This document shows positions 17,853 through 64,000 of a stretch of DNA of 64,000 nt, one piece after another. A program made the position numbers and the translations under genes. Origin of the DNA: Euprymna scolopes (taxonomy: Eukaryota); the NCBI GenBank assembly GCA_053919585.1, contig CM132804.1. One strand, given 5' to 3'. Every line of letters begins with the position of its first letter. Position 1 is the stretch's first letter. Below the pieces are notes generated by a model, which had not been told where the DNA came from, did not search any database, and saw only the letters and a list, made by a program, of their open reading frames with translations.

Positions 17853-18070
17853 TAATTTAATTGCTACCCCACGCGTACAGAGTAAGGCTCTAGGTCAGTT
17901 TTTAGTGTGGGGAAAATCAAGCTTCCCAAAAAGGGACACTCTGGATAGAAACACAAATTAAAATTTGTGTTAGGCATGAAGCATTTCCCTTCCACTAATA
18001 GAAGACATGAATGGTAACATGAAGCATCAGAACAGATGCTACACTGTGATCTTGGCCCAAAAACCACATG
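17853..18070 (-). mobile_element. Dispersed U2-snRNA-headed repeat (subfamily B)
   Basis: Minus strand ggccaagatcacagtgtagcatctgttctgatgc...tggaagggaaatgcttcatgc...ccccacactaaaaactgacc...gggtagcaattaaatt, matching 54500-54681 and 55967-56075. Confidence 0.75.
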
Positions 18071-18678
18071 GGCATTATTATTTGCACTGAGTAGCGCTTT
18101 GACATTAATAATTTCTTTTGTGACAGAGGATGTGTTTTTTATGCTAAATATACGTATGCAGTAAAACAAGTATACATTAACATAATAGACATCAAGTATT
18201 AAAAATGGTAGTAGCCAGCACTGTATGTCACCATATTACATACGTGGATTTCTCGTGTCAGTATTGCAAGCGGCTGACAATATTTTCTCTTCTGCAAACT
18301 CTCAATGAGGGCCAGAGAATCAAAGGCACCACGTGAAGGTGACGGGTCTTTATCTACTTACTAACCTCACTCTTTTATCTGATTCAAATGCCGTAACACA
18401 TAACATTTCCAGGTCACACGGTCAAAACCTATGGGGCCCAACACTGTATTTATCAAATCTTATCTCCAAGAAGGTACAATAATACACATCATCCTGAAAC
18501 TCATTAAAACAGGTTTACACTATCGGGTTAGTGAAAATTCGCTATCATAGCCGGACCAAAAAACGTATATATATATTTACCTTGGCTTTTTTTTTATTGG
18601 CCATAATGACACATTGTAAACGTGGCTATATATTTTTATTTATATTCCTATGAAGTAGAAGTTACCTTTATTTATATA

Positions 18679-20127
18679 TAAGCATTTCAGCCCGGCGTTG
18701 CTCGGGGGTTTAGAGGTGTATGTTAAGCAAAAAAAAAAAAAAAGTGGTCAATTTTTTTAAAAAGTTTGACCCCTATTAGGACCCCTTAACATTTATAGTC
18801 TGGGGCTAAAATCAAGTTATTTAGTTAGATCCATGTTAATGAAACCTATCTCAAATTTCAAGTGTTTACACCCAAAATTAGCGGAGGAGTCGGGTAGAAT
18901 TTTCAAAGGTCAAATCGTTGAACTTTGACCCCTTAACAGGCAAATTTTCGACCGAAAACTGATTACAAAGATTTTCACAAATCTCAGTAACCTGTATATC
19001 AAATTTCGAATCTGTAGACTTAAAATTTACAGAGTTATTGCGTTGGAAAATGTACACACAAAGACACACACACAGACACATTGACGTTTATAGATGTACT
19101 AGCATTTCAGCCCGGTGTTGCCCGGGTGTTTGGAGGTGTATGTTGAGCAAAAAAAAAAAAGCGGTTAATTTTTTTAAAATTTGAAAGCTATTATGACCAC
19201 TTAACATTTATTGTTTTGGACTAAAATCAAGTTATTAAGTTAGATCCATGTCCATGGAACCTATATCGAAAATTTCCAGTGTGTAGACCCCAAATTGTCG
19301 GAGGAGTTTGGTAGAGTTCTCAAAGGTCAAATCGTTGAATTTTGATCCCTTAACAGCCAAATTTCTGGCCGAAACCTAATCACCAAGATTTCCCCAAATC
19401 TCAGTATCCGGTATATCAAATTTCGAGTCTTTGGACTTAAAATTGACAGAGTTATTGCGCAGAGCATGTACACACAGAAACACACAGACACACACACACA
19501 CAGACAAGTTCACTTTTATATCTATACTAGCATTTCAGCCAGGCGTTGCCCAGGTGTTTGGAGGTACATGTTGAGTAAAAAAAAGTGGTAGTAGGAAATG
19601 TCGAAATTTTAGGCAGACATGAAACATACATACATACATTTATATATTGGTAACCAACAATTTTCGACCCAAACCGATTAAAAATGCTTGACCTATCTCT
19701 GATTACCCTTTACGTAAAAGTTCAAATGTTTCAACCAGAAATTGTCTGAGTAATTAGGTAGAGACCGCAGAGAGCAATTTGTTTTTAAGTATTATGACCA
19801 CTTAACATTTATTGTTAGGGGCTTTATTAAGTTGGATCCATGTCCAAGGAACCAATATCTTAAATTCCAAGTATTTAGACCCCAAATTGTCGGAGGAGTT
19901 TGGTAGAGTTCTCACAGGTCAAATCGTTGAACTTTGACAACTTAACAATAATATTTCTGGCCGAAAACGAATTATAGAGATTATCTCCAACTCAGTACCC
20001 TGTATATCAAATGTCGCGCCTGTAGACTGAAAATTGCGGTGTTATTGCGTTGGAAAATGTACACAGACGCACAGACATACAGATACACAGACAGACACAC
20101 AGACACGTTCACTTTTATAGATATAGA
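18679..20127 (-). mobile_element. Head-to-tail triplet of non-autonomous Helitron family A
   Basis: Units begin at 18679, 19099 and 19527; on the minus strand each ends in a cccgggcaac(a/g)ccgggc hairpin, ~7 nt, then CTAG; the TCTAT-type start is clearest in unit 3. Confidence 0.8.
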
Positions 20128-37597: not shown

Positions 37598-37820
37598 TTG
37601 GTAGAGACCGTAGATGTGAATTTTTTAAAAACTTTGCACCCTATTATTACCCCCTAACAAGTATTGATTTGAGCTCAAATCAAATTATTAAGTTAGATCC
37701 ATGTCCAAGAACCTATATCTAAAATTACAAGGATTTTTATACCCAAAATTGTCGGAGGAGGTTGGTAGAGTTCTCAAAAGTCAAACACACAGAGACAAAC
37801 ACATTCGCTTTTATATATAT
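37598..37820 (-). mobile_element. Helitron family A 5' fragment
   Basis: agttagatccatgtccaa, ttgtcggaggaggttggtagagttctcaaa and acacattcgcttttatata as in 18679-20127. Confidence 0.7.
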
Positions 37821-37821
37821 A

Positions 37822-38551
37822 CTAGCAAATGTACCCGTCGTTGACTAGGTTCAAAAACAGCCTACAGAAAATGGACTCTGATTTATGAAAGTATTATAGC
37901 TTATGAAAAGGAAGGGTTGTAAAGAGATAGCTTCGAATTTGGAGGCATAAAAACCAAAACAAAATATTATGAAAGTAAAAATAAAATAGATAAACCCCAT
38001 AATTTATTATACCATACCTGTTCACACTTAACCACTTATCACCATATTCTGTGGATATATATTAAAACACCTTGTTAAACTTTGTGACATATTTCCATTC
38101 TATTGAGGTCAGGCGCGAATAAGCGCCCCATAATTTTATTCTACCATATTTCTTCAAACTGAAACATAATTATCAAAGTATACGAAAAGATATGAAAAGT
38201 CTTTATTAAAGTTTGTGCCTATTTCCATTCTATGGAGGCCCGGCGCGAACAAAAATCCCACAATTTTATTATACCATCCCTATTTAAGTTAAAACATACT
38301 TTTCAAAGTATTCTTTATACATTTATATAAAACACACTTGTAAACGTTTTTTTAAATTTCTTTTATTTCCATACTTTGTTGACCAGGCGCATACACAACC
38401 CCCACAATTTGAATGAATCATCTTTACGCAAGATTAAACACACCCATTCCTGTGTTTCGATACATCTTTTATCATTATATGTAATCAGTTCTTTACTATA
38501 GTCAACCATATAGGGACCTATTCGTTACCAGACACACACACAGTCGTTCAG

Positions 38552-38560
<9 letters not shown>
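37822..38560 (-). mobile_element. Non-autonomous Helitron family B, near complete
   Basis: CTAG at 37822 with an adjacent imperfect cccgtc-gtt-gactagg hairpin; homologous to 7010-7690; no TIR or TSD. Confidence 0.72.
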
Positions 38561-38630
<70 letters not shown>

Positions 38631-38631
<1 letters not shown>

Positions 38632-39392
38632 TAGCATTTAAGCCCTACGTTGCCCGGGTGTTTAAATGTATGCATTGAGCAAAAAAAAAAAAAGTGGTAG
38701 AAGGAAGGCAGGCTTGAACCCGTATGGGAAAACACCTGACGTCTTTGGTGTTACGATCACAGCCAAACGGGAAGTGACGTAGGTTTAAATTAAGGCTAGA
38801 CAATCGAAAGGAAAAGATGATATTCGAAAATATCGGCGATATAAGCGACCCCCATATAGAAAAGTGCCCAGTTTGAGGTAAATATATTAATGTTTTAGCC
38901 AATTTTTCGATATTTGTCGTCTGAAAGGTCGAACTTTAAAACGATACTTATCTTGTAAAAAGCCGTGTCCTCAGTCGAAAGTTTTAGGTAGACATGCAAA
39001 CTTACATACATACATTTATATATTGGTAGCTAAAACTTTTCGAACCAAGCCGATTAAAAAGCCTGCCCTATTTCTGAGTAACCTTTATGTCAAATTTCAA
39101 TTGTTTAGACTAGACATTTCCTGAGTAATTTGGTAGAGACCGCAGATGTCAAATTAAAAAAAAATGACTCCAATTATGACCCCTTAACATTTATTGTTTT
39201 GAGCTCAAATCAAGTTAATAAGTTAGGTATATGCCCAAGAAACCTATATCTAAAATTTCAAGTGTTTAGGCTAAACATTGGCGGAGGAGTTAGGTAGAGT
39301 TCTCAGAGGTTAAAACGGTGAACTATGTCCCCTTAACAGCCAAATTCCTGGCCGAAAACGGATTCCAAATCTCAGTACCCTGTATATCAAAC
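38631..39392 (-). mobile_element. Non-autonomous Helitron family A copy
   Basis: ctagcatttaagccctacgttgcccgggtg terminus directly after (TA)n; body matches unit 3 of the 18679-20127 array. Confidence 0.78.
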
Positions 39393-40135
39393 TTAAACAT
39401 ATAATAAAATGCCTTCGAGAACAATATTTATTTTAAACATTAAAAAGTTCAAAATTATTATGGTCTATTTACATTGTTTAAAATTTAAACAGTTTTTGAA
39501 CAATATTTCTTTACAAAATTATATAAAAAATCTATCTCTGTTGTCTAAAATTGAACTGTTCTATTAATATTGCTTATAATATAATAAAAATTCTGTATAT
39601 ATTGTTTAAAATAAATAATTGTTTATAATTTAAAGGAAATGTTCTGTTTAAGTGCACGCATATTTTTGGCGAAAAAATATGGCCACCGTTTTTAACATGA
39701 AAAAATTACATTGTTTAATATTCGAAAAAAAAAAACTACGTATTTGCGGAAATTTAAAATGCGATATTCGTTTTCAGCATAATCAAACACCCATAGAAGT
39801 CGACATTTCAAGGGAAAATGTTCAGGTTGAAACAAAGTTAAAAATAATTATCATTATCAAATTATAATTTAAAATTATAAAACGTTCGGTACTTATGTAT
39901 TTTTGTTACCGTGCTGAAATAATATTATTTTGAAAGCCATTCTAAACATGGGAATAGGGGGGTGTTTTGTAACAATTATGTGCTTCCACCTAATAAATTA
40001 TGATAAAAGAAGCTGCTTACTGTTTACTACAATAATATCAGGGGGTCTCTATTTACGCTGAACATTCACAAAAATGTCAAAATCAATGTATTACATATGA
40101 AAAAGTCCACTGTGGATTTTCCACAGGTCTCGCTA

Positions 40136-47609: not shown

Positions 47610-48480
47610 GTTCTCCCCTGACAAGTGATATCGCCACTTGGACGTTAGAGGCTACTATTAAGGAGCATGCTTAGAAATAATAAACAAGATGTTGGTTTAC
47701 GTTACATTTAAACTTCTACATATGAGTACAGTCAGGAAAGCAGGTAGCAGGAAGGGAATTCCAATGCCTAACTGTTCGAGCAGAAGAAACTATAATAGAA
47801 GATATGTATATGTATAAGACAAGGCTTAGAGCTTAGTTGAACATAGTGGGATCAATTAGATTGAAAAATGTATTTCTACACAGGAGGGGAGGTTATTGGT
47901 AGACGCACCAGCCAAGATGTAGCAACAATACTTGATGTATGGGCGAATAGTATGTATTCATTTGCTTTCCCACTGAGCAAATGAGGCACAAGGCCGTTTT
48001 TAAATGTGGAGAGAGAGGGAAGGGGTAGGGGAAAGGGGACCAACTCCCGATGTGTGGGAAATGGGAGCTGGATAGTGACAACTGGTATGAAGGGTTGCTC
48101 CTACATTGACCAAGGTCTTATATGTGGGGTTTCCCCCAGATATGGTCTTTGCTCGGAGTATCTGACGGAACAGATACTATGCTTCGATCTTGTCGCCCGG
48201 ATCGCAAAGGGAAGTACATGATACTCTCCGGTTTGAGTTGTCTTCTAGATCGGTTGAGGGATCTTACTTTATTAGCAGCAGCTTTCGCCATGTCCTCAGT
48301 GTTTTTGTTCGAGTCCATACAACCCGTAAATATAAGGCCAGGGAATTGGAAGGAAGAATTCTCAGATTATTTTACATGGATGTCGATGGTTGGAATGACG
48401 TCTTATTTGTGTTACCCTGTGAAAGTTAAACGGGACAATTTATAAAGAGAAAGACCTTAATGTTCACCGATACATTAGTG
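47610..48480 (-). mobile_element. CR1-group LINE fragment split by a U2-headed insertion
   Basis: AAANKVRSLNRSRRQLKPESIMY on one side and TIRPYIKYCCYILAGAS on the other; these motifs are contiguous in the copies at 6650-6740 and 26560-26650. Confidence 0.82.
47954..48213 (-). mobile_element. Dispersed U2-snRNA-headed repeat (subfamily A)
   Basis: Minus strand caagatcgaagcatagtatctgttccgtcagatact...gcaaagaccatatctgggggaaaccccacatataagaccttggtcaatgtagg...gcaaatgaatac, colinear with 54251-54494. Confidence 0.9.
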
Positions 48481-52572: not shown

Positions 52573-54250
52573 TAAACCTTAATTATTGTTTCTATTCGTG
52601 TTTTCTTTTCGAAGAGTAAATTAATTTAAAGGACAATTGGCAATCNNNNNNNNNNNNNNNNNNNNNNNNNNNNNNNNNNNNNNNNNNNNNNNNNNNNNNN
52701 NNNNNNNNNNNNNNNNNNNNNNNNNNNNNNNNNNNNNNNNNNNNNNNNNNNNNNNNNNNNNNNNNNNNNNNNNNNNNNNNNNNNNNNNNNNNNNNNNNNN
52801 NNNNNNNNNNTGTTTTTGTCAGTGCTTCCAAGAGTGCAATAGTTGTCTTTTCTCTTGCAAGTATAATTTAGTCACTCTGTACTTTTATCAATGCTGTGCT
52901 ACTAGATGGTGACCACATATTTCTTGAAACTTTGAATGAGCTTAAAAATGCGCACGTATACCATTATCATTATTTCCATTATATCATTTCAACTATATTT
53001 TATATACACACTGATTTAACCTCATTTGAATTAGTAAAGTGTAATATAGTGCATGGACAGTATGATAATATCCATACGAATTCACCTTGCATTGTTGATG
53101 ATAAACTGAAAAATATCCTAAAACCCATCCACTTGAAACTCAGCTTTGTGAAGATGGTAATTAGTCTTATAGGAGAAGATCGCCTGAAGATAGTGGATTA
53201 AAACTATAGTTTGCAGGCATGAAGTTTACAATAAGTGGATTGCCCTTTACTCTTGTTTACTTGCAATGGTAACATACATTTTTAATTTTGCAATTCTCTG
53301 AAATATATCAAATATGTTTGCAAATAGATAAATAACGGGTCTTGTGCAGTTTTACTTTACTAAGAATGTTAGTGAATTAATTTCGTAATCAGCTTCCATC
53401 TTATTACACATGTAGATGAGTAAATGAGGAGCTTATGTTGAGGGCCAATCATGTATAAAATTTTCTTGTAGTTTTAGGAACAGCTGGAGAGTAATAACAT
53501 TGTTGATGGCATCTGCAGCTAGATAAGTGGTTACGGAGATTCTTTTGTAAGTGAACCATGGGTTGAAGTTCAGTCGGGTGAGAAAAGGGTTAGTAAGGAG
53601 AAGAATATGAATACCTAGAAGATTTTGTAGGCAAATTCTTACCCTATTAAGCTAGTGGTTATGAAAAAGCATTTATTAATAAAAACTGTAATGGGATTCC
53701 ATTTCCGTTTATAAAAAAAAGTTATATTTCGAACGTTATCGGAGCACTCAAAAATAGAACAGTGATATATTCTGTTATGAATGTTTTTGAATCAATCTGG
53801 ATGGATGTTAAATTGTTCTATTTGGAACTTTTTTTTTAACACTTTAGAATAATCAAGACAATGTCTTGCAGAAAACATATATAAAGACTCTGCAGAATTC
53901 GCGCCAGTTTGTTAACAAAGTTATTAATTTGAAGTTGCCAACTTGTTAAGAACTCGGGTAATCTTTCAAGAATAAAAATTTAACAGTAAGAAACAGCTTA
54001 GAAGCCAACCACCGCATCATTTGAAGAAATTGTACTTTCTGTATTTTTTCTCACTGAACAAAAAAACTATATATTTTAATATAAGGTTTTACCCATAGAT
54101 AAAACATTTGGTTTGAAGTTAAGAGTTATTATCTCCTTTTCACTATTTATCTATTTACCTTATAATTTGCTTTCAAAGCTTGTAGCAGAAGTACGAACAA
54201 AGTTTATTTACTTGAAAATATTTTCTATGGTTTATGTTAAATTAAGTATG

Positions 54251-56075
54251 TCGTTCTTGGCCTTCCGGCCGGGATCAAAGTTTAGTATCTGTTCCGGCAG
54301 ATACTGCAAGCAAAGACCCTATGTGGGGGCGACCCCACAGATAAGACCTTGATCAATGTAGGGGCAACCCTTCATACCAATTGTTACTATCCAGCTCCCC
54401 TACTCCCCGGGGAGTTGGTCCCCATTTCCTCTTCACTCCTCATTTTAAAAATCGACCTTGCGCCTAATTTGCTCGGTGGGGAGCAAAGAAATGCCTCAAA
54501 GATGCTGCCCTTAAGATAATTTGTACCAGTCAATGGAGGGGAAACCCTCTATACTGGGACAATTATTATTTTTGGTAACCAGATTGCCCCCTTTTTGCCT
54601 ACTTTTAGGGGAGCTGGTTTTTACCCCACATTAAAAACGGCCTTATGCCTAATTTGCTTTGGTGGGGGCGCAAATAAATACATTAAATTAAGCATGTTTT
54701 TATTTTAACTATGAGTTTCATTAGTTTTCTTCTTTTAATTTATTGCGCGCTCATATCCTATGAAAGAAACATGTATGAAAGGATTACTTGAGCAGCTCAC
54801 ACCCAAATGTGGAACAATCTTAATTCTAGAACACATTTTTAGTCGAGTACAAGCGACTCTATAAGTCACTCCGTCGGTCCGTGGGTTTGTCGGTCTGTCG
54901 GTCTGTCGGTCTGTCGGGTGGTCTGTCGCTCTGTCCGTAAAACTTTTGTGCTTGGCCTCTTTGGTTAAGATCAAATATGCTGTTCTTAGCTTTTTAAGCT
55001 TTTCTTGGCCTTTTGGCCAAGAAGACCATATGTGGGGGCTATCGCACATATAAGACCTTGGTCAATGTAGAGGCAACCCTTCATACCAATTGACACAATC
55101 CAGCTCCCCTACTCCCTACTTCCTCTCCACTCCTCACATTAAAAATCGGCCTTGTGCCTAATTTGCTCGGCGGGAGAGCAAATAAATACCATTTTCTTGG
55201 CCTTTTGTCCAAGATCAAAGTGCAGATACTGCAAGCAAAGACCATATGTGGGGGAAACCCCACATATAAGACTTGATTCAATGTAGGGGCAACACTTCCT
55301 ACCAATTGTCAATATCCAGCTCCCCTACTGCCCTGGGAGTTGGTCCCCATTTCCCCTTCACTCCTCACATTAAAAATAGGCCTCGCGCCTAATTTGCTCG
55401 GTAGGGAGCAAATAAATACCGACCCACATATAAGACCTCTGTCAATGTAGCGGCAACCCTTGATACCAATTGACACAATCCAACTCCCCTACTCCCTGGG
55501 GAGTTGGTCCCCATTTCCTCTCCACTTCTCACATTAAAAATCGACCTTGTGCCTAATTTGCTCGGTAGGAGAGCAAATAAATACCATTTTTTTTGGCGTT
55601 TTCGCCAAGATCAAAGTGCAGATACTGCAAGCAAAGACCATATGTGGGGGCGACCCACATATAAGACCTTGGTCAATTTAGGGGGAACACTTCATACCAA
55701 TTGTTTCTATCCAGCTCCCCTACTCCCCGGGGAGCTGATCCCCATTTCCCCTTCACTCCTCACTTTAAAAATCGGCCTTGTGCCTAATTTGCTCAGTGGG
55801 GGAGCAAATAAATACCCCTTTCTTGGCCTTTTGACCAAGATCAGAGTGTAGCATCTGTCTTACTACATGCTGTACTTATGTTTGCCACTTTTCCTTGGCC
55901 ATATAGCTAAGATCAAGAGTGCAGTATCTGTTCTTAATAGACGCTGTACTTACGTTTATAACTCTTCCTTGGCCACATGGCTAAGATCAAAGTGTAGTAT
56001 ATGTTCTTAACAGATGCTGCACTTACATTTGTAACTTTTCCTTGACAATGGAAGGGGAAACCCTTCCATGCTAAG
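54251..56075 (+). repeat. Tandem array of U2-snRNA-headed structured repeats
   Basis: A-type units 54251-54494, 55000-55190, 55191-55420, 55421-55585 (5'-truncated), 55586-55815; B-type body 54500-54681; short head 54949-54990; three ~73-bp heads at 55821, 55893, 55967. The head ttcttggccttttggc(c/t)aagatcaaagtgtagtatctgttctta matches U2 nt ~5-48. Confidence 0.9.
54836..54945 (+). mobile_element. DINE-1/Helentron-associated (HINE-like) 5' end
   Basis: tttttagtcgagtacaagcgactctataagtcact (hairpin agtcg..cgact), followed by a (gtcggtct)n microsatellite. Confidence 0.6.
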
Positions 56076-56077
56076 GA

Positions 56078-56280
56078 TTTTTTCGTCGCATGCAATCACT
56101 CCATCGGTCAGTCTCTAACACATTTACATTTTATTTTATTTTTTGTAAGCAAGAGATATGGAGTAACAGTTTTGTCCCCCGAATTACTGAGAGGGGCTTA
56201 TGTTTTCAATGGGTCCGTCTGTTCGTTAGTCCGGATGATTGACGGATAACTGTCCATTAGTTTTTCCTGAAATTTTTATT
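56078..56280 (+). mobile_element. Degenerate HINE-like end fragments
   Basis: ttttttcgtcgcatgcaatcactccatcggtc resembles 54836; ttttgtcccccg...gagggg...gtccgtctgttcgt has the T-run/hairpin/GTCC layout. Confidence 0.4.
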
Positions 56281-57077
56281 TATTTAAGTCATTTCACACC
56301 ATTTTCCGGTCATTTTAGTTCATCTTTAAGAATTCCATGTCAATCCTACATTCACGCATTCATTCATTACACGAGAGCACGCGACTAATGACTATCGGCA
56401 TTGTTCCTTAGTACAGGTAGAGATTTCGTCAGATTTAAAATATTTCTGAAGCGGTAAAATGTGTCCATCATCTATCCGGTGAGATTTGTAATGAATTTGA
56501 AGTAATTGGTATATTTCAGGCCACGCGCAAAAATCAGTCCCAAATGCTTGTTAGAGCACGGTGTTTTCCGAGTACGAGAGTCATTTCTTTCAATTGGTGC
56601 TTAAAATATTAAAGTTTGGTTGTGGATTGTACATTATCTTAAAAGTTTTTCTTCACTAAATTGTGGTGTAACATATTGAAAGGCAGTATCAAAGAGTGAA
56701 CCTGTATGATTATCCGATATCAAGAGTTAAGCGCATGCGCATCGAGGAATTCACGCTTGATTTATGTTTCTGTAATTATCATTGCCAAATTAGAATGCTA
56801 AGACGTGTGTTAGAAAATGATAAATATATTAGTTGCAATAATAAAAAAGTTAACAAGAAATACATAGTTGAGCAACAATGATTTATTATTGCATTCCTTT
56901 ATGCTTGCAAACTGACAGTTTATCCATCTTAGACGACGTTCTTTGTGCATCCTCACATCGGTATTCTTTTTCTGTAAATATCTATTAATTAAAATAAAAA
57001 GATATAATCGCATATAAAATGTGTCACTTGCAAACGATAAAAGCACAAAACAGTTTGAAAGGAAATACTGCCGCGGT

Positions 57078-58572: not shown

Positions 58573-59864
58573 CGAGGGGTGTTCAATAAGTAATGTCAAT
58601 GACCCACTTGCAGTTGTCTGATCTAGCTGACATTATGCATGTGCAATGATCTATAGCTTTAGGGGTTATGTGGCAAATTACAGCTCTGAACTAATTGTGG
58701 CTTCTGTTTTACAGATGTTTGAACTGAGTCAGGTGTGAAATGGAGCCTGTTGAATGTCGAGCAGTGATCTGGTTTTTGTATTTGAAAGGACGCCCACCAC
58801 AGGAGAATTTTGATGAAATGAAAGAAACTTATGGTGATAATGCCCCATCATATAACCTTGTAAAACTCTGGCATCGTGAATACAAACATGGCCGGAAGTC
58901 TATGGAAACAGCTCCCAGACCTGGTCGCCCCCATTCTGCCATTGGTGAGGCATCTGTTCGTCAAGTTGTGGCTGTCATTTTGGAAGATCGGCGCATTACT
59001 ATTCACCAAATAGCCCAAGATGTCAAAGTTAGTACAGAGTCTGTGGAAACTATAATTCATTACCATTTGCATATGCATAAGGTGTCTGCCAGATGGATTT
59101 GCAGGTTGCTCACACCATTCCAGAAGTGAGAACGCGTCGAGTGCTCGAGGATGAATTTTGAGATATCGCAAGAAGATGAGTCAATGTTTATCAAAAAAAC
59201 TGGTTTAACAGGATGAAACCTGGGTCCATCACTATGATCCAGAGACCAAGGTCCAGTCAATGCAGTGGAATCACTTGGACTCACCACCTCCAAAGAAGGC
59301 AAAGGTGCAGCCCTGCGCTGGCAAAGTCATGCTCACAGTCTCCTGGAACTAAGACGGAGTTATGATGACAGATTTCCTGACAAAGGGTACCACAATTACA
59401 GGAGCCTATTATGCTTCACTTTTGAGGAAATTAAGGAAAGCTATCAAAATCAAGAGGCAGGGCAAGATCAGCAAAGGTACCCTTCTCCTGCAGGAGACGC
59501 TCCAGTCCACAACTCGCATGTCGCCAGATCAGAAGCACGGGCGTGTGGTTATGAAATCCTACCCCATCCTCCTTACTCTCCTGACTTGCACGCTTTGACT
59601 TTCACCTCGTCCCAGCCATGAAGTTGTGTTTGAATGGAAAGAGTTTCCAAGATGATGTAGCCTTGATTTCTGAAGTCACGTAGTGGTTGGAGGACCAACC
59701 ATGTGTGTTCTACAAAAACGGTTTCCAGAGCTGCATCAAATGATGGGAGAAATGCATAACTCTTGGTGGTCCCTATGTAGAGAAACACAAATAACTGTGC
59801 CACGTTTTGTTGCTCTACTTCTATGGGAAGTAGGTCAGGGACATTACTTATTGCACGCCCCTCG
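58573..59864 (+). mobile_element. Full-length mariner (DD34D) element, 1292 bp, inactive
   Basis: TA TSD on both sides; TIRs cgaggggtgttcaataagtaatgtc / gacattacttattgcacgcccctcg. Confidence 0.95.
58740..59794 (+). pseudogene. Mariner transposase pseudogene (irritans-like)
   Basis: RAVIWFL..., PRPGRP, KVSARWICRLL (WVPRxL), TG*ETWVHHYDPETK-like, LPHPPYSPDL..FDFHL; stops and frameshifts. Confidence 0.93.
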
Positions 59865-62644: not shown

Positions 62645-64000
62645 TGATTTAAGTAGACCCCCCCCCCAGATATTAGTGAACTGTCATTTTTTATTTTCAT
62701 TGCTCCAATTTTTAATGATTTAAGTAGAAAACCCCCGGATAATACTGAACTGTTATTTTCTATTTTCATTGCTCCAATCTTTAATGATTTAAGTAGAAAA
62801 AAACAGATATTAGTGAAGTGTCAATTTCTATTTTCATTGCTCCAATTTTTAATGATTTAAGTACAAAAAAAACAGATATTAGTGAACTGTCATTTTCTAT
62901 ATTCATTGCTCCAATTTTTAATGATTAAAGTAGAAAACCCCCAGATATTACTGAAGTGTCAGTTTCTATTTTCATTGCTCCAATTTGTAATGATTTAAGT
63001 AGAAAAAACAGATATTAGTGAAGTGTCAATTTCTATTTTCATTGCTCCAATTTTTAATGATTTAAATAGAAAAAAAACAGATATTAGTGAAGTGTCAATT
63101 TCTATATTCATTGCTCCAATTTTTAATGATTTAAGTAGAAAAAACAGATATTAGTGAAGTGTCAATTTCTATTTTCATTGCTCCAATTTTTAATTATTTA
63201 AGTAGAAACCCCCCAGATAATACTGAACTGTCAGTTTCTATTTTCATTGCTCCAATTTTTAATGAGTTAAGTAGAAAAAAACAGATATTAGTGAAGTGTC
63301 AATTTCTATATTCATTGCTTCAATTTTTAATGATTTAAGTAGAAAAAAACAGATATTAGTGAAGTGTCAATTTCTATTTTCATTGCTCCAATTTTTAATG
63401 GTTTAAGTAGAAAACCCCCAGATATTAGTGAAGTGTCAATTTCAATTTTCATTGCTCCAAATTTTAATGATTTTAGTAGAAAAAACAGATATTAGTGAAG
63501 TGTCAATTTCTATTTTCATTGCTCCAATTTTTAATGATCTAAGTAGAAAAAACAGATATAAGTGAAGTGTCAGTTTCCATTTTCATTGCTCCAATTTTTA
63601 ATGGTTTAAGTAGAACACCCCCAGATATTAGTGAAGTGTCAGTTTCTATTTTCATTGCTCCAAATTTTAATGATTTAAGTTGAAAAAAAACAGATATTAG
63701 TGAAGTGTCAATTTCTATTTTCATTGCTCCAATTTTTAATGATTTAAGTAGAAAACCCCCAGATATTAGTGAAGTGTCAATTTCTATTTTCATTGCTCCA
63801 ATTTTTAATGATTTAAGTAGAAAACCACCAGATATTAGTGAACTGTAAGTTTCTATTTTCATTGCTCCAATTTTTAATGATTTAAGTAGAAAACCCCCAG
63901 ATATTAGTGAACTGTCGATTTCTATTTTCATTGCTTCAATTTTTAATGATTTAAGTAGAAAACCCCCAGATATTAGTGAAGTGTCGATTTCTATTTTCAT
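62645..64000. repeat. ~59-60-bp AT-rich satellite, >=22 copies, continues past the window end
   Basis: Unit gatttaagtagaaaa(aaaa/cccc)cagatattagtgaagtgtcaatttctattttcattgctccaatttttaat. Confidence 0.97.

What the first reader, a model, noticed from the sequence alone, without database searches (positions are those of the whole stretch)
54251..56075. U2 snRNA-headed structured repeat family, both arrayed and dispersed: candidate new snRNA-derived mobile element
Seen: about ten units in 1.8 kb, eight of them starting with a head like ttcttggccttttggccaagatcaaagtgtagtatctgttctta. The longer units have a conserved multi-hairpin body ending tttgctc-ggtggg-gagcaaataaatac. Two subfamilies (A with an extra atatgtgggg-GNRA-ccccacatat hairpin, B without) are mixed in the array, and each has a solo copy elsewhere (47954-48213, 17853-18070). 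Known: the head is the U2 5' end (stem-loop I, U6-pairing region, GUAGUA). snRNA-derived SINEs (SINEU) are described from crocodilians, and Utopia and Keno retrotransposons target U2 genes. Inference: this is an amplified non-autonomous element built on U2 in an invertebrate, not a set of ordinary U2 pseudogenes, because the body after nt ~48 is shared between copies yet is not canonical U2. There is no poly(A) tail.
Basis: partly seen in the sequence, partly recalled or inferred. Interest (0 to 1): 0.92.

Follow-up and report, generated by a model that had tools for sequence, protein, structure and literature searches.

The report
U2-headed retroposon that targets itself
This mollusc genome holds tens of thousands of copies of a short, non-coding jumping element that starts with the first ~45 bases of U2 spliceosomal RNA. 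It shares its tail and its insertion site with a protein-coding LINE found inside the real U2 gene cluster. Because it inserts into its own U2-like head, it builds head-to-tail arrays like the one in this window.

Summary
Window 54251-56075 holds six long units, each a U2 5' head of up to ~45 nt plus a ~200-nt hairpin-rich body ending AAATAAATACC. It also holds short U2-like 73-nt units, and there are solo copies at 47954-48213 and 17853-18070.

The family is very large. The 14-nt tail occurs 63,223 times exactly, against 71 for the control.

- **Real U2 genes:** they form a 764-bp tandem array on another chromosome and share only nt ~1-47 with these units.
- **LINEs in the U2 array:** the array is interrupted by ~7-kb LINEs of L1 type (AP endonuclease + RT). 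They carry the same U2 head, a related 3' tail (17 of 18 core bases, then a terminal hairpin and AAATA), and the same insertion point.
- **Junctions:** 77 of 100 unbiased SINE 3' ends, and 5 of 20 sampled LINE 3' ends, are followed by ATCTGTTC, which is U2 nt 38 onward and the published Keno/Utopia site.
- **Array structure:** each array has one head, at its 5' end. Neighbouring units are never each other's closest relatives (0 of 20).

I conclude that arrays grow by repeated site-specific retrotransposition into the head, not by local duplication.

This is a SINEU-like element paired with a Keno-like LINE, a new variant of a known kind. The scan has already noted this U2-headed family on other pieces of this genome. 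The LINE partner, the target site and the array mechanism are what this report adds.

The parts
54237..54250 (+). Left target-site duplication (TTAAATTAAGTATG) of the dimer
   Evidence: The same 14-mer, with one mismatch, recurs at 54683-54696 right after the dimer's 3' end.
54251..54495 (+). Unit 1: U2-like head (54251-54294) plus A-type body
   Evidence: 92% identical to the reference A copy over positions 4-245. Rfam U2 partial match at 29 bits.
54496..54681 (+). Unit 2: starts with TCAAAG (U2 nt 27-32), then a B-type body and the shared tail
   Evidence: 89% identical to a B1 reference over positions 51-220. The junction class 'nt 27' is also seen genome-wide.
54683..54696 (+). Right target-site duplication (TTAAATTAAGCATG)
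54836..54999 (+). 5' part of a host repeat: start TTTTTAGTCGC..., a (GTCGGTCT)n run at 54873-54935, and a degenerate U2-like unit at 54938-54999
   Evidence: The same flank is found at 10 or more other loci. TRF result.
55000..55190 (+). Unit 3: head nt 2-24 joined to A body positions 62-245
55191..55420 (+). Unit 4: head nt 1-33 plus A body; starts directly after the previous tail
55421..55585 (+). Unit 5: 5'-truncated A body (positions 83-245), no head
55586..55816 (+). Unit 6: head plus A body
   Evidence: 89% identical to the reference over positions 2-245.
55817..56075 (+). Three 73-nt U2-like units (head plus ~30 nt) and a GNRA hairpin fragment, belonging to the host repeat
   Evidence: TRF period 73, 2.9 copies. 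Rfam U2 partial matches at 32-40 bits. The same units occur in other host copies.
56076..56405 (+). 3' part of the host repeat; the last ~130 nt are conserved and end ...GCACGCGACTAATGRCTATCGG
   Evidence: 89-94% identical at 10 other loci.
47954..48213 (-). Solo A-type copy with a diverged head at a site that is not U2-like
   Evidence: 82% identical to the reference over positions 20-244. The 3' flank is unrelated to U2.
17853..18070 (-). Solo distant relative: head plus B-like body plus a related tail
   Evidence: ~70% identical to B1. The tail aligns with the family tails.

Best explanation
The units belong to a very abundant family of short non-coding retroposons with several subtypes that share one tail (A, B1, C), plus a relative with a diverged tail (B2). 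A full copy has a head copied from U2 snRNA nt 1-45, a body of GNRA-capped hairpins, and a 3' tail made of a conserved box, a hairpin and AAATAAATACC.

The family is most likely copied by the proteins of an L1-type LINE (AP endonuclease + reverse transcriptase) that lives in the real U2 gene array. This LINE resembles the published U2-specific Keno.

Inferred mechanism:
- The endonuclease nicks U2-like DNA so that the new copy's 3' end abuts U2 nt 38 (ATCTGTTC...).
- Reverse transcription starts at the tail hairpin.
- The second nick, about 8 nt further on, duplicates ATCTGTTC.
- The head upstream is left intact, so it can be hit again. Each hit adds a unit just behind the head, and head-to-tail arrays of mixed subtypes grow with a single head at the 5' end.

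Shown here: the shared tail, head and junction, the array anatomy, and the independence of neighbouring units. Inferred: the enzymology, and that LINE-2 or a close relative is the actual driver.
For: **Real U2 and the LINEs**
- Real U2 genes form a 764-bp array. It is interrupted by LINEs on the same strand with ORF2 = Exo_endo_phos + RVT_1 + zf-RVT.
- ORF2 aligns along residues 6-866 with human L1 ORF2p at E 7e-64. It matches R2 only in the RT region, at E 1e-19.
- Both LINEs begin CAGTGC directly after U2 nt 46-47.

**Shared tail**
- SINE and LINE tails share a 17-of-18 core, GGCCTTGTGCCTAA(T/G)TTG. In LINE-2 and the SINE (not LINE-1) a hairpin follows and the element ends in AAATA(C/A)(C/A).

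**Shared junction**
- 63,223 exact tails against 71 for the control. Of the first 100 in genome order, 77 are followed by ATCTGTTC, 3 by TCAAAG (nt 27) and 7 by the head's 5' end.
- 5 of 20 sampled LINE-2-family 3' ends abut ATCTGTTC, four of them within a SINE head. One LINE shows an 18-bp TSD that begins exactly there.
- The published Keno/Utopia 3' flank starts at U2 nt 39 (PMC4640811).

**Retroposon anatomy**
- Units are 3'-anchored: 94 of 137 end at reference positions 243-245, while starts are scattered.
- A 14-bp TSD flanks the dimer in this window.

**Array anatomy**
- 9,256 exact head-to-body junctions. In all 13 cases I could pair with a tail cluster in the first 15 Mb of C1, the head lies at the 5' end of a run (my reading).
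- No head-head duplicates.
- Adjacent units average 85% identity against 89% between loci. 0 of 20 adjacent pairs are each other's closest relatives.
- Arrays mix the A, B1 and C subtypes.
Against: - No transcript starting at the head was seen. PolyA RNA-seq reads of the family lie on both strands and run into flanking sequence. LINE-2 is nearly silent, and no U2-to-LINE junction reads were found.
- In the U2 array itself the LINE 3' flanks start at U2 nt 1 (LINE-2) or nt ~25 (LINE-1), not nt 38. The nick site is therefore not unique.
- The tail similarity outside the 18-nt core is loose, and one of 1000 shuffles reached the same local alignment score.
- Placement in the Tx1 clade was not tested.
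- My locus sample came from top-scoring hits and is biased. Only searches are unbiased samples.
Confidence: 0.75

Rival explanations
1. The mobile element is headless. It is a short non-autonomous derivative that starts at CAGAT and ends AAATACC. Every U2-like head seen upstream belongs to the target (an older U2-derived SINE, pseudogene or host repeat), not to the inserted RNA.
For: - About three quarters of units lack head nt 1-37.
- LINE tandem arrays join tail directly to CAGCTTGG with no head.
- The C43 LINE copy has a head that is clearly target-derived, with an 18-bp TSD.
- The dimer in this window can be read as an A unit inserted into the head of an older B element.
Against: - A-type heads share substitutions that are absent from real U2 (ATTTTCTTGG, GGCCAAG) and differ from the TTCG-loop heads of B2 elements.
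- LINE-2 carries the same GGTCAAG head variant in the U2 array, where neighbouring genes read GGCTAAG, and on another chromosome.
- A solo headed A copy lies at a site whose 3' flank is not U2-like.
- Tails abut head nt 1 in about 4-7% of cases.
Confidence: 0.2
2. The arrays are satellite DNA that arose from one element and expanded by unequal crossing-over or replication slippage.
For: - Regular periods of about 200-245 bp.
- Some whole arrays recur at several loci (L015, L029, L030).
Against: - Adjacent units are no more alike than units on different chromosomes, and 0 of 20 adjacent pairs are closest relatives.
- Subtypes are mixed within arrays.
- 5'-truncated units sit directly behind complete tails.
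- There is a single head at the 5' end of each array.
Confidence: 0.04
3. The array at 55000-55816 was not built at this site. It arrived, wholly or in part, inside the ~0.8-kb host repeat (54836-56405), which already carried an A unit when it spread.
For: Ten other copies of the host repeat have an A unit at the same place, right after the degenerate U2-like unit.
Against: - Host copies differ in the number of units (one to many), the junction type (nt 1 or nt 27) and the deletions present. This points to later, separate events at a hot spot.
- This rival concerns the local history only, not the family's mechanism.
Confidence: 0.3

Closest known systems
SINEU (U1/U2-headed SINEs of crocodilians; Kojima 2015, PMC4494074)
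   Same: - Short non-coding retroposon with a 5' head copied from U2 snRNA.
- No recognisable internal Pol III promoter, and T-runs inside.
- Partner LINEs of the L1/Tx1 type, some carrying the same snRNA head.
- Shared target preference of SINE and LINE.
- Frequent 5' truncation.
   Different: - The host is a mollusc.
- The body and tail were not compared with SINEU sequences.
- The target is the element's own U2-like head at nt 38, not a Mariner element, so copies pile up in head-to-tail arrays.
- The SINE tail resembles the LINE tail, whereas no LINE tail match was found for SINEU-1.
Keno (Tx1-clade LINE specific for U2 snRNA genes; Kojima and Fujiwara 2004, as cited in PMC4494074 and PMC4640811)
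   Same: - AP endonuclease plus RT.
- Sits in U2 genes in the same orientation.
- The main 3' junction of the family is at U2 nt 38/39, as published for Keno and Utopia.
   Different: - Keno is reported from vertebrates, lancelet and cnidarians.
- Clade membership was not tested here.
- In the U2 array the 3' flanks start at nt 1 or nt ~25.
- No SINE partner of Keno is mentioned in the two Kojima papers read here (PMC4494074, PMC4640811).
Utopia (U2-specific LINE with a restriction-like endonuclease; PMC4640811)
   Same: - Same target gene and the same 3' junction.
- Occasional tandem insertion.
- Relatives that insert into U2-derived satellites in Ciona.
   Different: The LINEs here have an AP endonuclease and align with L1 ORF2p, not with R2-like proteins.
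R2/R1 in rDNA and telomeric HeT-A/TART arrays
   Same: Site-specific or end-specific retrotransposition that yields ordered head-to-tail arrays (general knowledge).
   Different: Here the target site is carried by the element family itself, so arrays can seed anywhere in the genome.

Membership tests
SINEU-type snRNA-headed SINE | 5' head derived from U1 or U2 snRNA | tested here: met
   36 of 38 identity to this genome's own U2 over nt 6-43. Rfam U2 aligns model positions 1-47 only.
SINEU-type snRNA-headed SINE | Short, non-coding, spread by retroposition (3'-anchored, 5' truncations, TSDs) | tested here: met
   Units are ~245 nt. 94 of 137 end at reference positions 243-245 while starts are scattered. 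A 14-bp TSD flanks the dimer.
SINEU-type snRNA-headed SINE | Partner LINE of the Tx1 group sharing head and target preference | tested here: inconclusive
   An L1-type LINE shares the head, tail core and nt-38 junction. Tx1 clade placement could not be tested because no reference sequences were available.
SINEU-type snRNA-headed SINE | Sequence relationship to crocodilian SINEU-1/2/3 | not testable with these tools
   Repbase and Dfam are not available. Independent origin is likely, given the host.
Keno (U2-specific Tx1 LINE) | ORF2 with AP endonuclease and RT | tested here: met
   Pfam Exo_endo_phos + RVT_1 + zf-RVT. End-to-end match to L1 ORF2p.
Keno (U2-specific Tx1 LINE) | Insertion in U2 genes at a fixed site, with the 3' flank starting at nt 39 | tested here: inconclusive
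   Copies lie in the U2 array with a 5' junction at nt 46-47, but their 3' flank starts at nt 1 or nt ~25. Dispersed copies abut nt 38 in 5 of 20.
Utopia | Restriction-like (PD..D/ExK) endonuclease C-terminal to RT | tested here: not met
   An N-terminal AP endonuclease is present instead.
Classical Pol III SINE (tRNA, 7SL or 5S head) | Head with an internal Pol III promoter | tested here: not met
   The head is U2, whose genes use an upstream Pol II promoter (established knowledge). No tRNA, 7SL or 5S match in Rfam. T4 runs occur inside the head and body.
Ribozyme-bearing tandem repeats (retrozymes, HDV-like 5' ends of LINEs) | Hammerhead, HDV-like or twister motif | tested here: not met
   No such Rfam match, even at E up to 10, on 54000-56300.
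Satellite DNA grown by unequal exchange | Neighbouring monomers most similar to each other | tested here: not met
   0 of 20 adjacent pairs are closest relatives.

The most novel reading that the evidence does not exclude
This would be a SINE/LINE pair in which the element family carries its own integration site, the U2 branch-point-recognition stretch in its head. Retrotransposition alone would then manufacture satellite-like arrays at any locus where one headed copy has landed. That would be a self-seeding route from mobile element to tandem repeat, accounting for tens of megabases in a cephalopod-size genome that is currently described as almost free of SINEs.
Probability: 0.55. Interest if true: 0.75.

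Novelty: new variant of a known kind. Interest (0 to 1): 0.62.

Why it matters
- **Range of snRNA-headed SINEs.** They are described only from crocodilians. This extends them to molluscs and links them to a U2-targeting LINE with a shared tail, head and insertion site.
- **Origin of tandem repeats.** It gives a concrete, testable mechanism for how retrotransposition can build long tandem arrays.
- **Repeat annotation.** A recent cuttlefish genome paper reports almost no SINEs and ~40% unclassified repeats in decapodiform cephalopods (PMC13218726). If this genome is of that kind, which is my inference from its size and chromosome count, a family with more than 60,000 exact tails shows that automatic annotation misses a major SINE-like component.
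- **Site-specific integration.** The fixed nick site in a conserved 15-nt U2 stretch may be of interest for work on targeted integration.

Tried and rejected
- **Rfam at gathering score on the whole window:** nothing.
- **The genome search with RF00004 on the 5.9-Gb genome:** failed twice. A 34-nt vertebrate-like U2 pattern found nothing. A 22-nt pattern then found the real array.
- **Named relatives of LINE ORF2:** the best hits are unnamed at ~62% identity, so there was no clade label.
- **Contigs of relatives in other organisms:** one had no DNA available but showed ORF1-ORF2 repeating every ~6.8 kb. Two marine metagenome contigs had no U2 flank.
- **Expression:** polyA RNA-seq shows family reads on both strands, embedded in longer transcripts. 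There are no starts at the head, LINE-2 is almost silent, and there are no U2-to-LINE junction reads. This gives no support for, and no evidence against, U2-promoter-driven transcription.
- **Count of headed against internal A units:** spoiled by my pattern's first letter, which excluded the canonical headed form.
- **Ribozyme idea:** rejected.
- **Literature:** 'SINEU' in an octopus paper turned out to be the word SINEUP.
- **Host repeat:** its class (Helitron-like? MITE?) was left unresolved. It has no clear TSD.

Full report
**What is in the window.** Alignment to natural reference copies taken from other loci resolves it into two parts.

The first part is a dimer at 54251-54681. It is a U2-like head plus an A-type body, followed by a B-type unit that starts at TCAAAG. 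The dimer is flanked by a 14-bp target-site duplication, TTAAATTAAG(T/C)ATG.

The second part is an array at 55000-55816, with no gaps between its units. It holds one internally deleted A unit, one full A unit, one 5'-truncated A unit and one more full A unit. The array lies inside another repeat (about 54836-56405) that itself carries U2-like 73-nt units (55817-56035, TRF). That host repeat recurs with the same flanks at ten or more other loci.

Rfam U2 aligns only model positions ~1-47 of each head, at 18-40 bits, below the gathering score. The A unit folds far better than shuffled sequence, with z -6.8. The predicted fold has U2 stem-loop I, a hairpin that pairs the branch-point-recognition stretch with the start of the body, and two GNRA-capped hairpins.

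**The real U2 and the family size.** The genome is 5.9 Gb, and public runs label it a mollusc. Genuine U2 genes (Rfam 161 bits) form a 764-bp tandem array on contig C9, with 1,186 exact hits to a 22-nt U2 pattern. The heads match real U2 at 36 of 38 positions over nt 6-43, and nothing beyond nt ~47 is shared. The units are therefore not U2 genes or plain pseudogenes.

The 14-nt tail AGCAAATAAATACC, with a loose 21-nt extension, occurs 63,223 times, against 71 for the reversed control. The exact 31-nt head-to-body junction occurs 9,256 times.

**The autonomous partner.** The U2 array is interrupted by ~7-kb elements on the U2 strand. LINE-1 (locus L047) and LINE-2 (L054) each have two long ORFs. 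ORF2 carries Exo_endo_phos, RVT_1 and zf-RVT domains. It aligns over residues 6-866 with human L1 ORF2p at E 7e-64, and with R2 only in the RT region. The partner is therefore of the AP-endonuclease type, like Keno, and not of the Utopia type.

Both LINEs begin CAGTGC right after U2 nt 46-47. The SINE bodies begin CAGAT(A/G)CTGC at the same point.

The LINE and SINE tails correspond. They share the core GGCCTTGTGCCTAA(T/G)TTG at 17 of 18 positions. In LINE-2 and the SINE a hairpin follows directly, 7 bp in the SINE and much longer in LINE-2 (z -5). The element then ends in AAATA(C/A)(C/A).

The LINE-2 family has at least 2,479 first-look candidates, and it too forms head-to-tail arrays with a period of ~7.0 kb. 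A relative in another organism shows the same arrangement.

**Shared insertion site.** I took the first 100 SINE tails in genome order as an unbiased sample. What follows each tail:

| Sequence after the tail | Count |
|---|---|
| ATCTGTTC (U2 nt 38 onward) | 77 |
| TCAAAG (nt 27) | 3 |
| 5' end of a head | 7 |
| 5'-truncated body | 4 |
| Unrelated DNA | 9 |

Of 20 sampled LINE-2-family 3' ends, five abut ATCTGTTC. Four of these continue into B-type SINE sequence. The fifth (C43) has a U2-like head upstream of its 5' end and an 18-bp duplication that begins exactly at ATCTGTTC.

A 96%-identical LINE-2 copy on C2 lies between a head and the remainder of a B2 SINE. That head carries the same GGTCAAG variant as the LINE-2 copy in the U2 array, whose neighbouring genes read GGCTAAG.

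The published 3' flank of both Keno and Utopia starts at U2 nt 39 (PMC4640811).

**How arrays arise.**
- Units are 3'-anchored. 94 of 137 end at the last three reference positions, while starts are scattered at positions 1-9, 43, 68, 105 and 189.
- Arrays mix the A, B1 and C subtypes behind one head, preceded by unique DNA (L029).
- In the first 15 Mb of C1, every head-to-body junction that I could pair with a tail cluster (13 of 13) lies at the 5' end of a run (my reading).
- No two heads lie closer than 140 nt.
- Adjacent units average 85% identity, against 89% between loci. In 0 of 20 adjacent pairs are the two units each other's closest relatives.

Local duplication therefore cannot explain the arrays.

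The simplest account is inferred from these junctions and from the established target-primed mechanism of L1-type LINEs. The endonuclease nicks the bottom strand opposite nt 37/38 of a U2-like head, and reverse transcription starts at the tail. The top strand is cut about 8 nt further on, which duplicates ATCTGTTC. The head upstream stays whole and can be used again. Each event therefore adds a unit directly behind the head.

**What remains open.**
- Whether the head travels in the RNA at every event, or is mostly supplied by the target, is not settled. Headed solo copies at sites that are not U2-like, family-specific head variants and tail-to-nt-1 junctions favour a headed full-length RNA. 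The headless majority and the C43 LINE favour a target origin.
- The tail-to-nt-1 junction is unexplained. It is seen for LINE-2 in the U2 array and in about 4-7% of SINE tails. It could be a second nick site, or a template jump onto an RNA that starts at U2 nt 1.
- Transcription is unknown. PolyA RNA-seq shows only embedded, two-strand reads, and LINE-2 is nearly silent.

**Comparison with what is known.** The nearest described system is crocodilian SINEU with its Tx1-Mar LINEs. Some of those LINEs carry the same snRNA head and share a target with the SINE (PMC4494074). The system here differs in four ways:
- The host is a mollusc.
- The target is the element's own U2-derived head at the Keno site.
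- The copies form arrays as a result.
- The SINE and LINE tails are recognisably similar.

No paper in the searchable library reports snRNA-headed SINEs in molluscs.

Earlier notes of this scan had already flagged the U2-headed family on other pieces of this genome, and one note proposed a U2-targeting LINE with a partner. My results were obtained independently and agree with them.

Natural copies served as references throughout.

Noticed in passing
window 54836-56405: A host repeat of ~0.8 kb without its inserts. It starts TTTTTAGTCGCGTGC and ends GCACGCGACTAATGGCTATCGGCCTTGTT. A 12-nt inverted match sits near both ends, and it contains a (GTCGGTCT)n run and U2-like 73-nt units. There is no clear TSD and its class is unknown. 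It looks like a recurrent landing pad for the A units.
   Followed up: partly
G000:C9:168.87-168.97 Mb (L047, L054): The real U2 gene array has a 764-bp period and more than 1,000 pattern hits. About 4 of the first 100 units are interrupted by intact-looking two-ORF LINEs. Three LINE-2 copies have identical junctions and may be one insertion spread by array homogenisation.
   Followed up: partly
G000: C3:81.88 Mb, C10:60.63 Mb, C19:152.7 Mb, C41:27.78 Mb and others: LINE-2-family copies stand in head-to-tail arrays with a ~7.0-kb period, outside the U2 locus. The tail is joined directly to the next copy's 5' end (CAGCTTGG...).
   Followed up: partly
window 58740-59621: Remnant of a Mos1/mariner-type transposase. 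An HTH_48 domain (E 9e-8) lies at 58740-59129, and a second ORF fragment downstream had no Pfam hit.
   Followed up: partly
window 62660-63970: Tandem repeat with a 67-69-bp period and about 19 copies, running to near the end of the window.
   Followed up: no
window 3016-3548, 18634-20125, 37622-39442: Another dispersed repeat family (repeat finder families D10-D18), present in several partly tandem copies. Not examined.
   Followed up: no
window ~52650-52800: A run of N (gap or masked stretch), seen as X in an ORF translation. Left untouched.
   Followed up: no
L002, L008, L024 (other chromosomes): A B2-type U2-headed SINE with its own diverged tail (ends GTAAATAGGTAC), often with a UUCG-type loop in the head. 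It is the commonest U2-headed sequence in the polyA RNA-seq reads laid on the head (907 of the loose ends at one place).
   Followed up: partly
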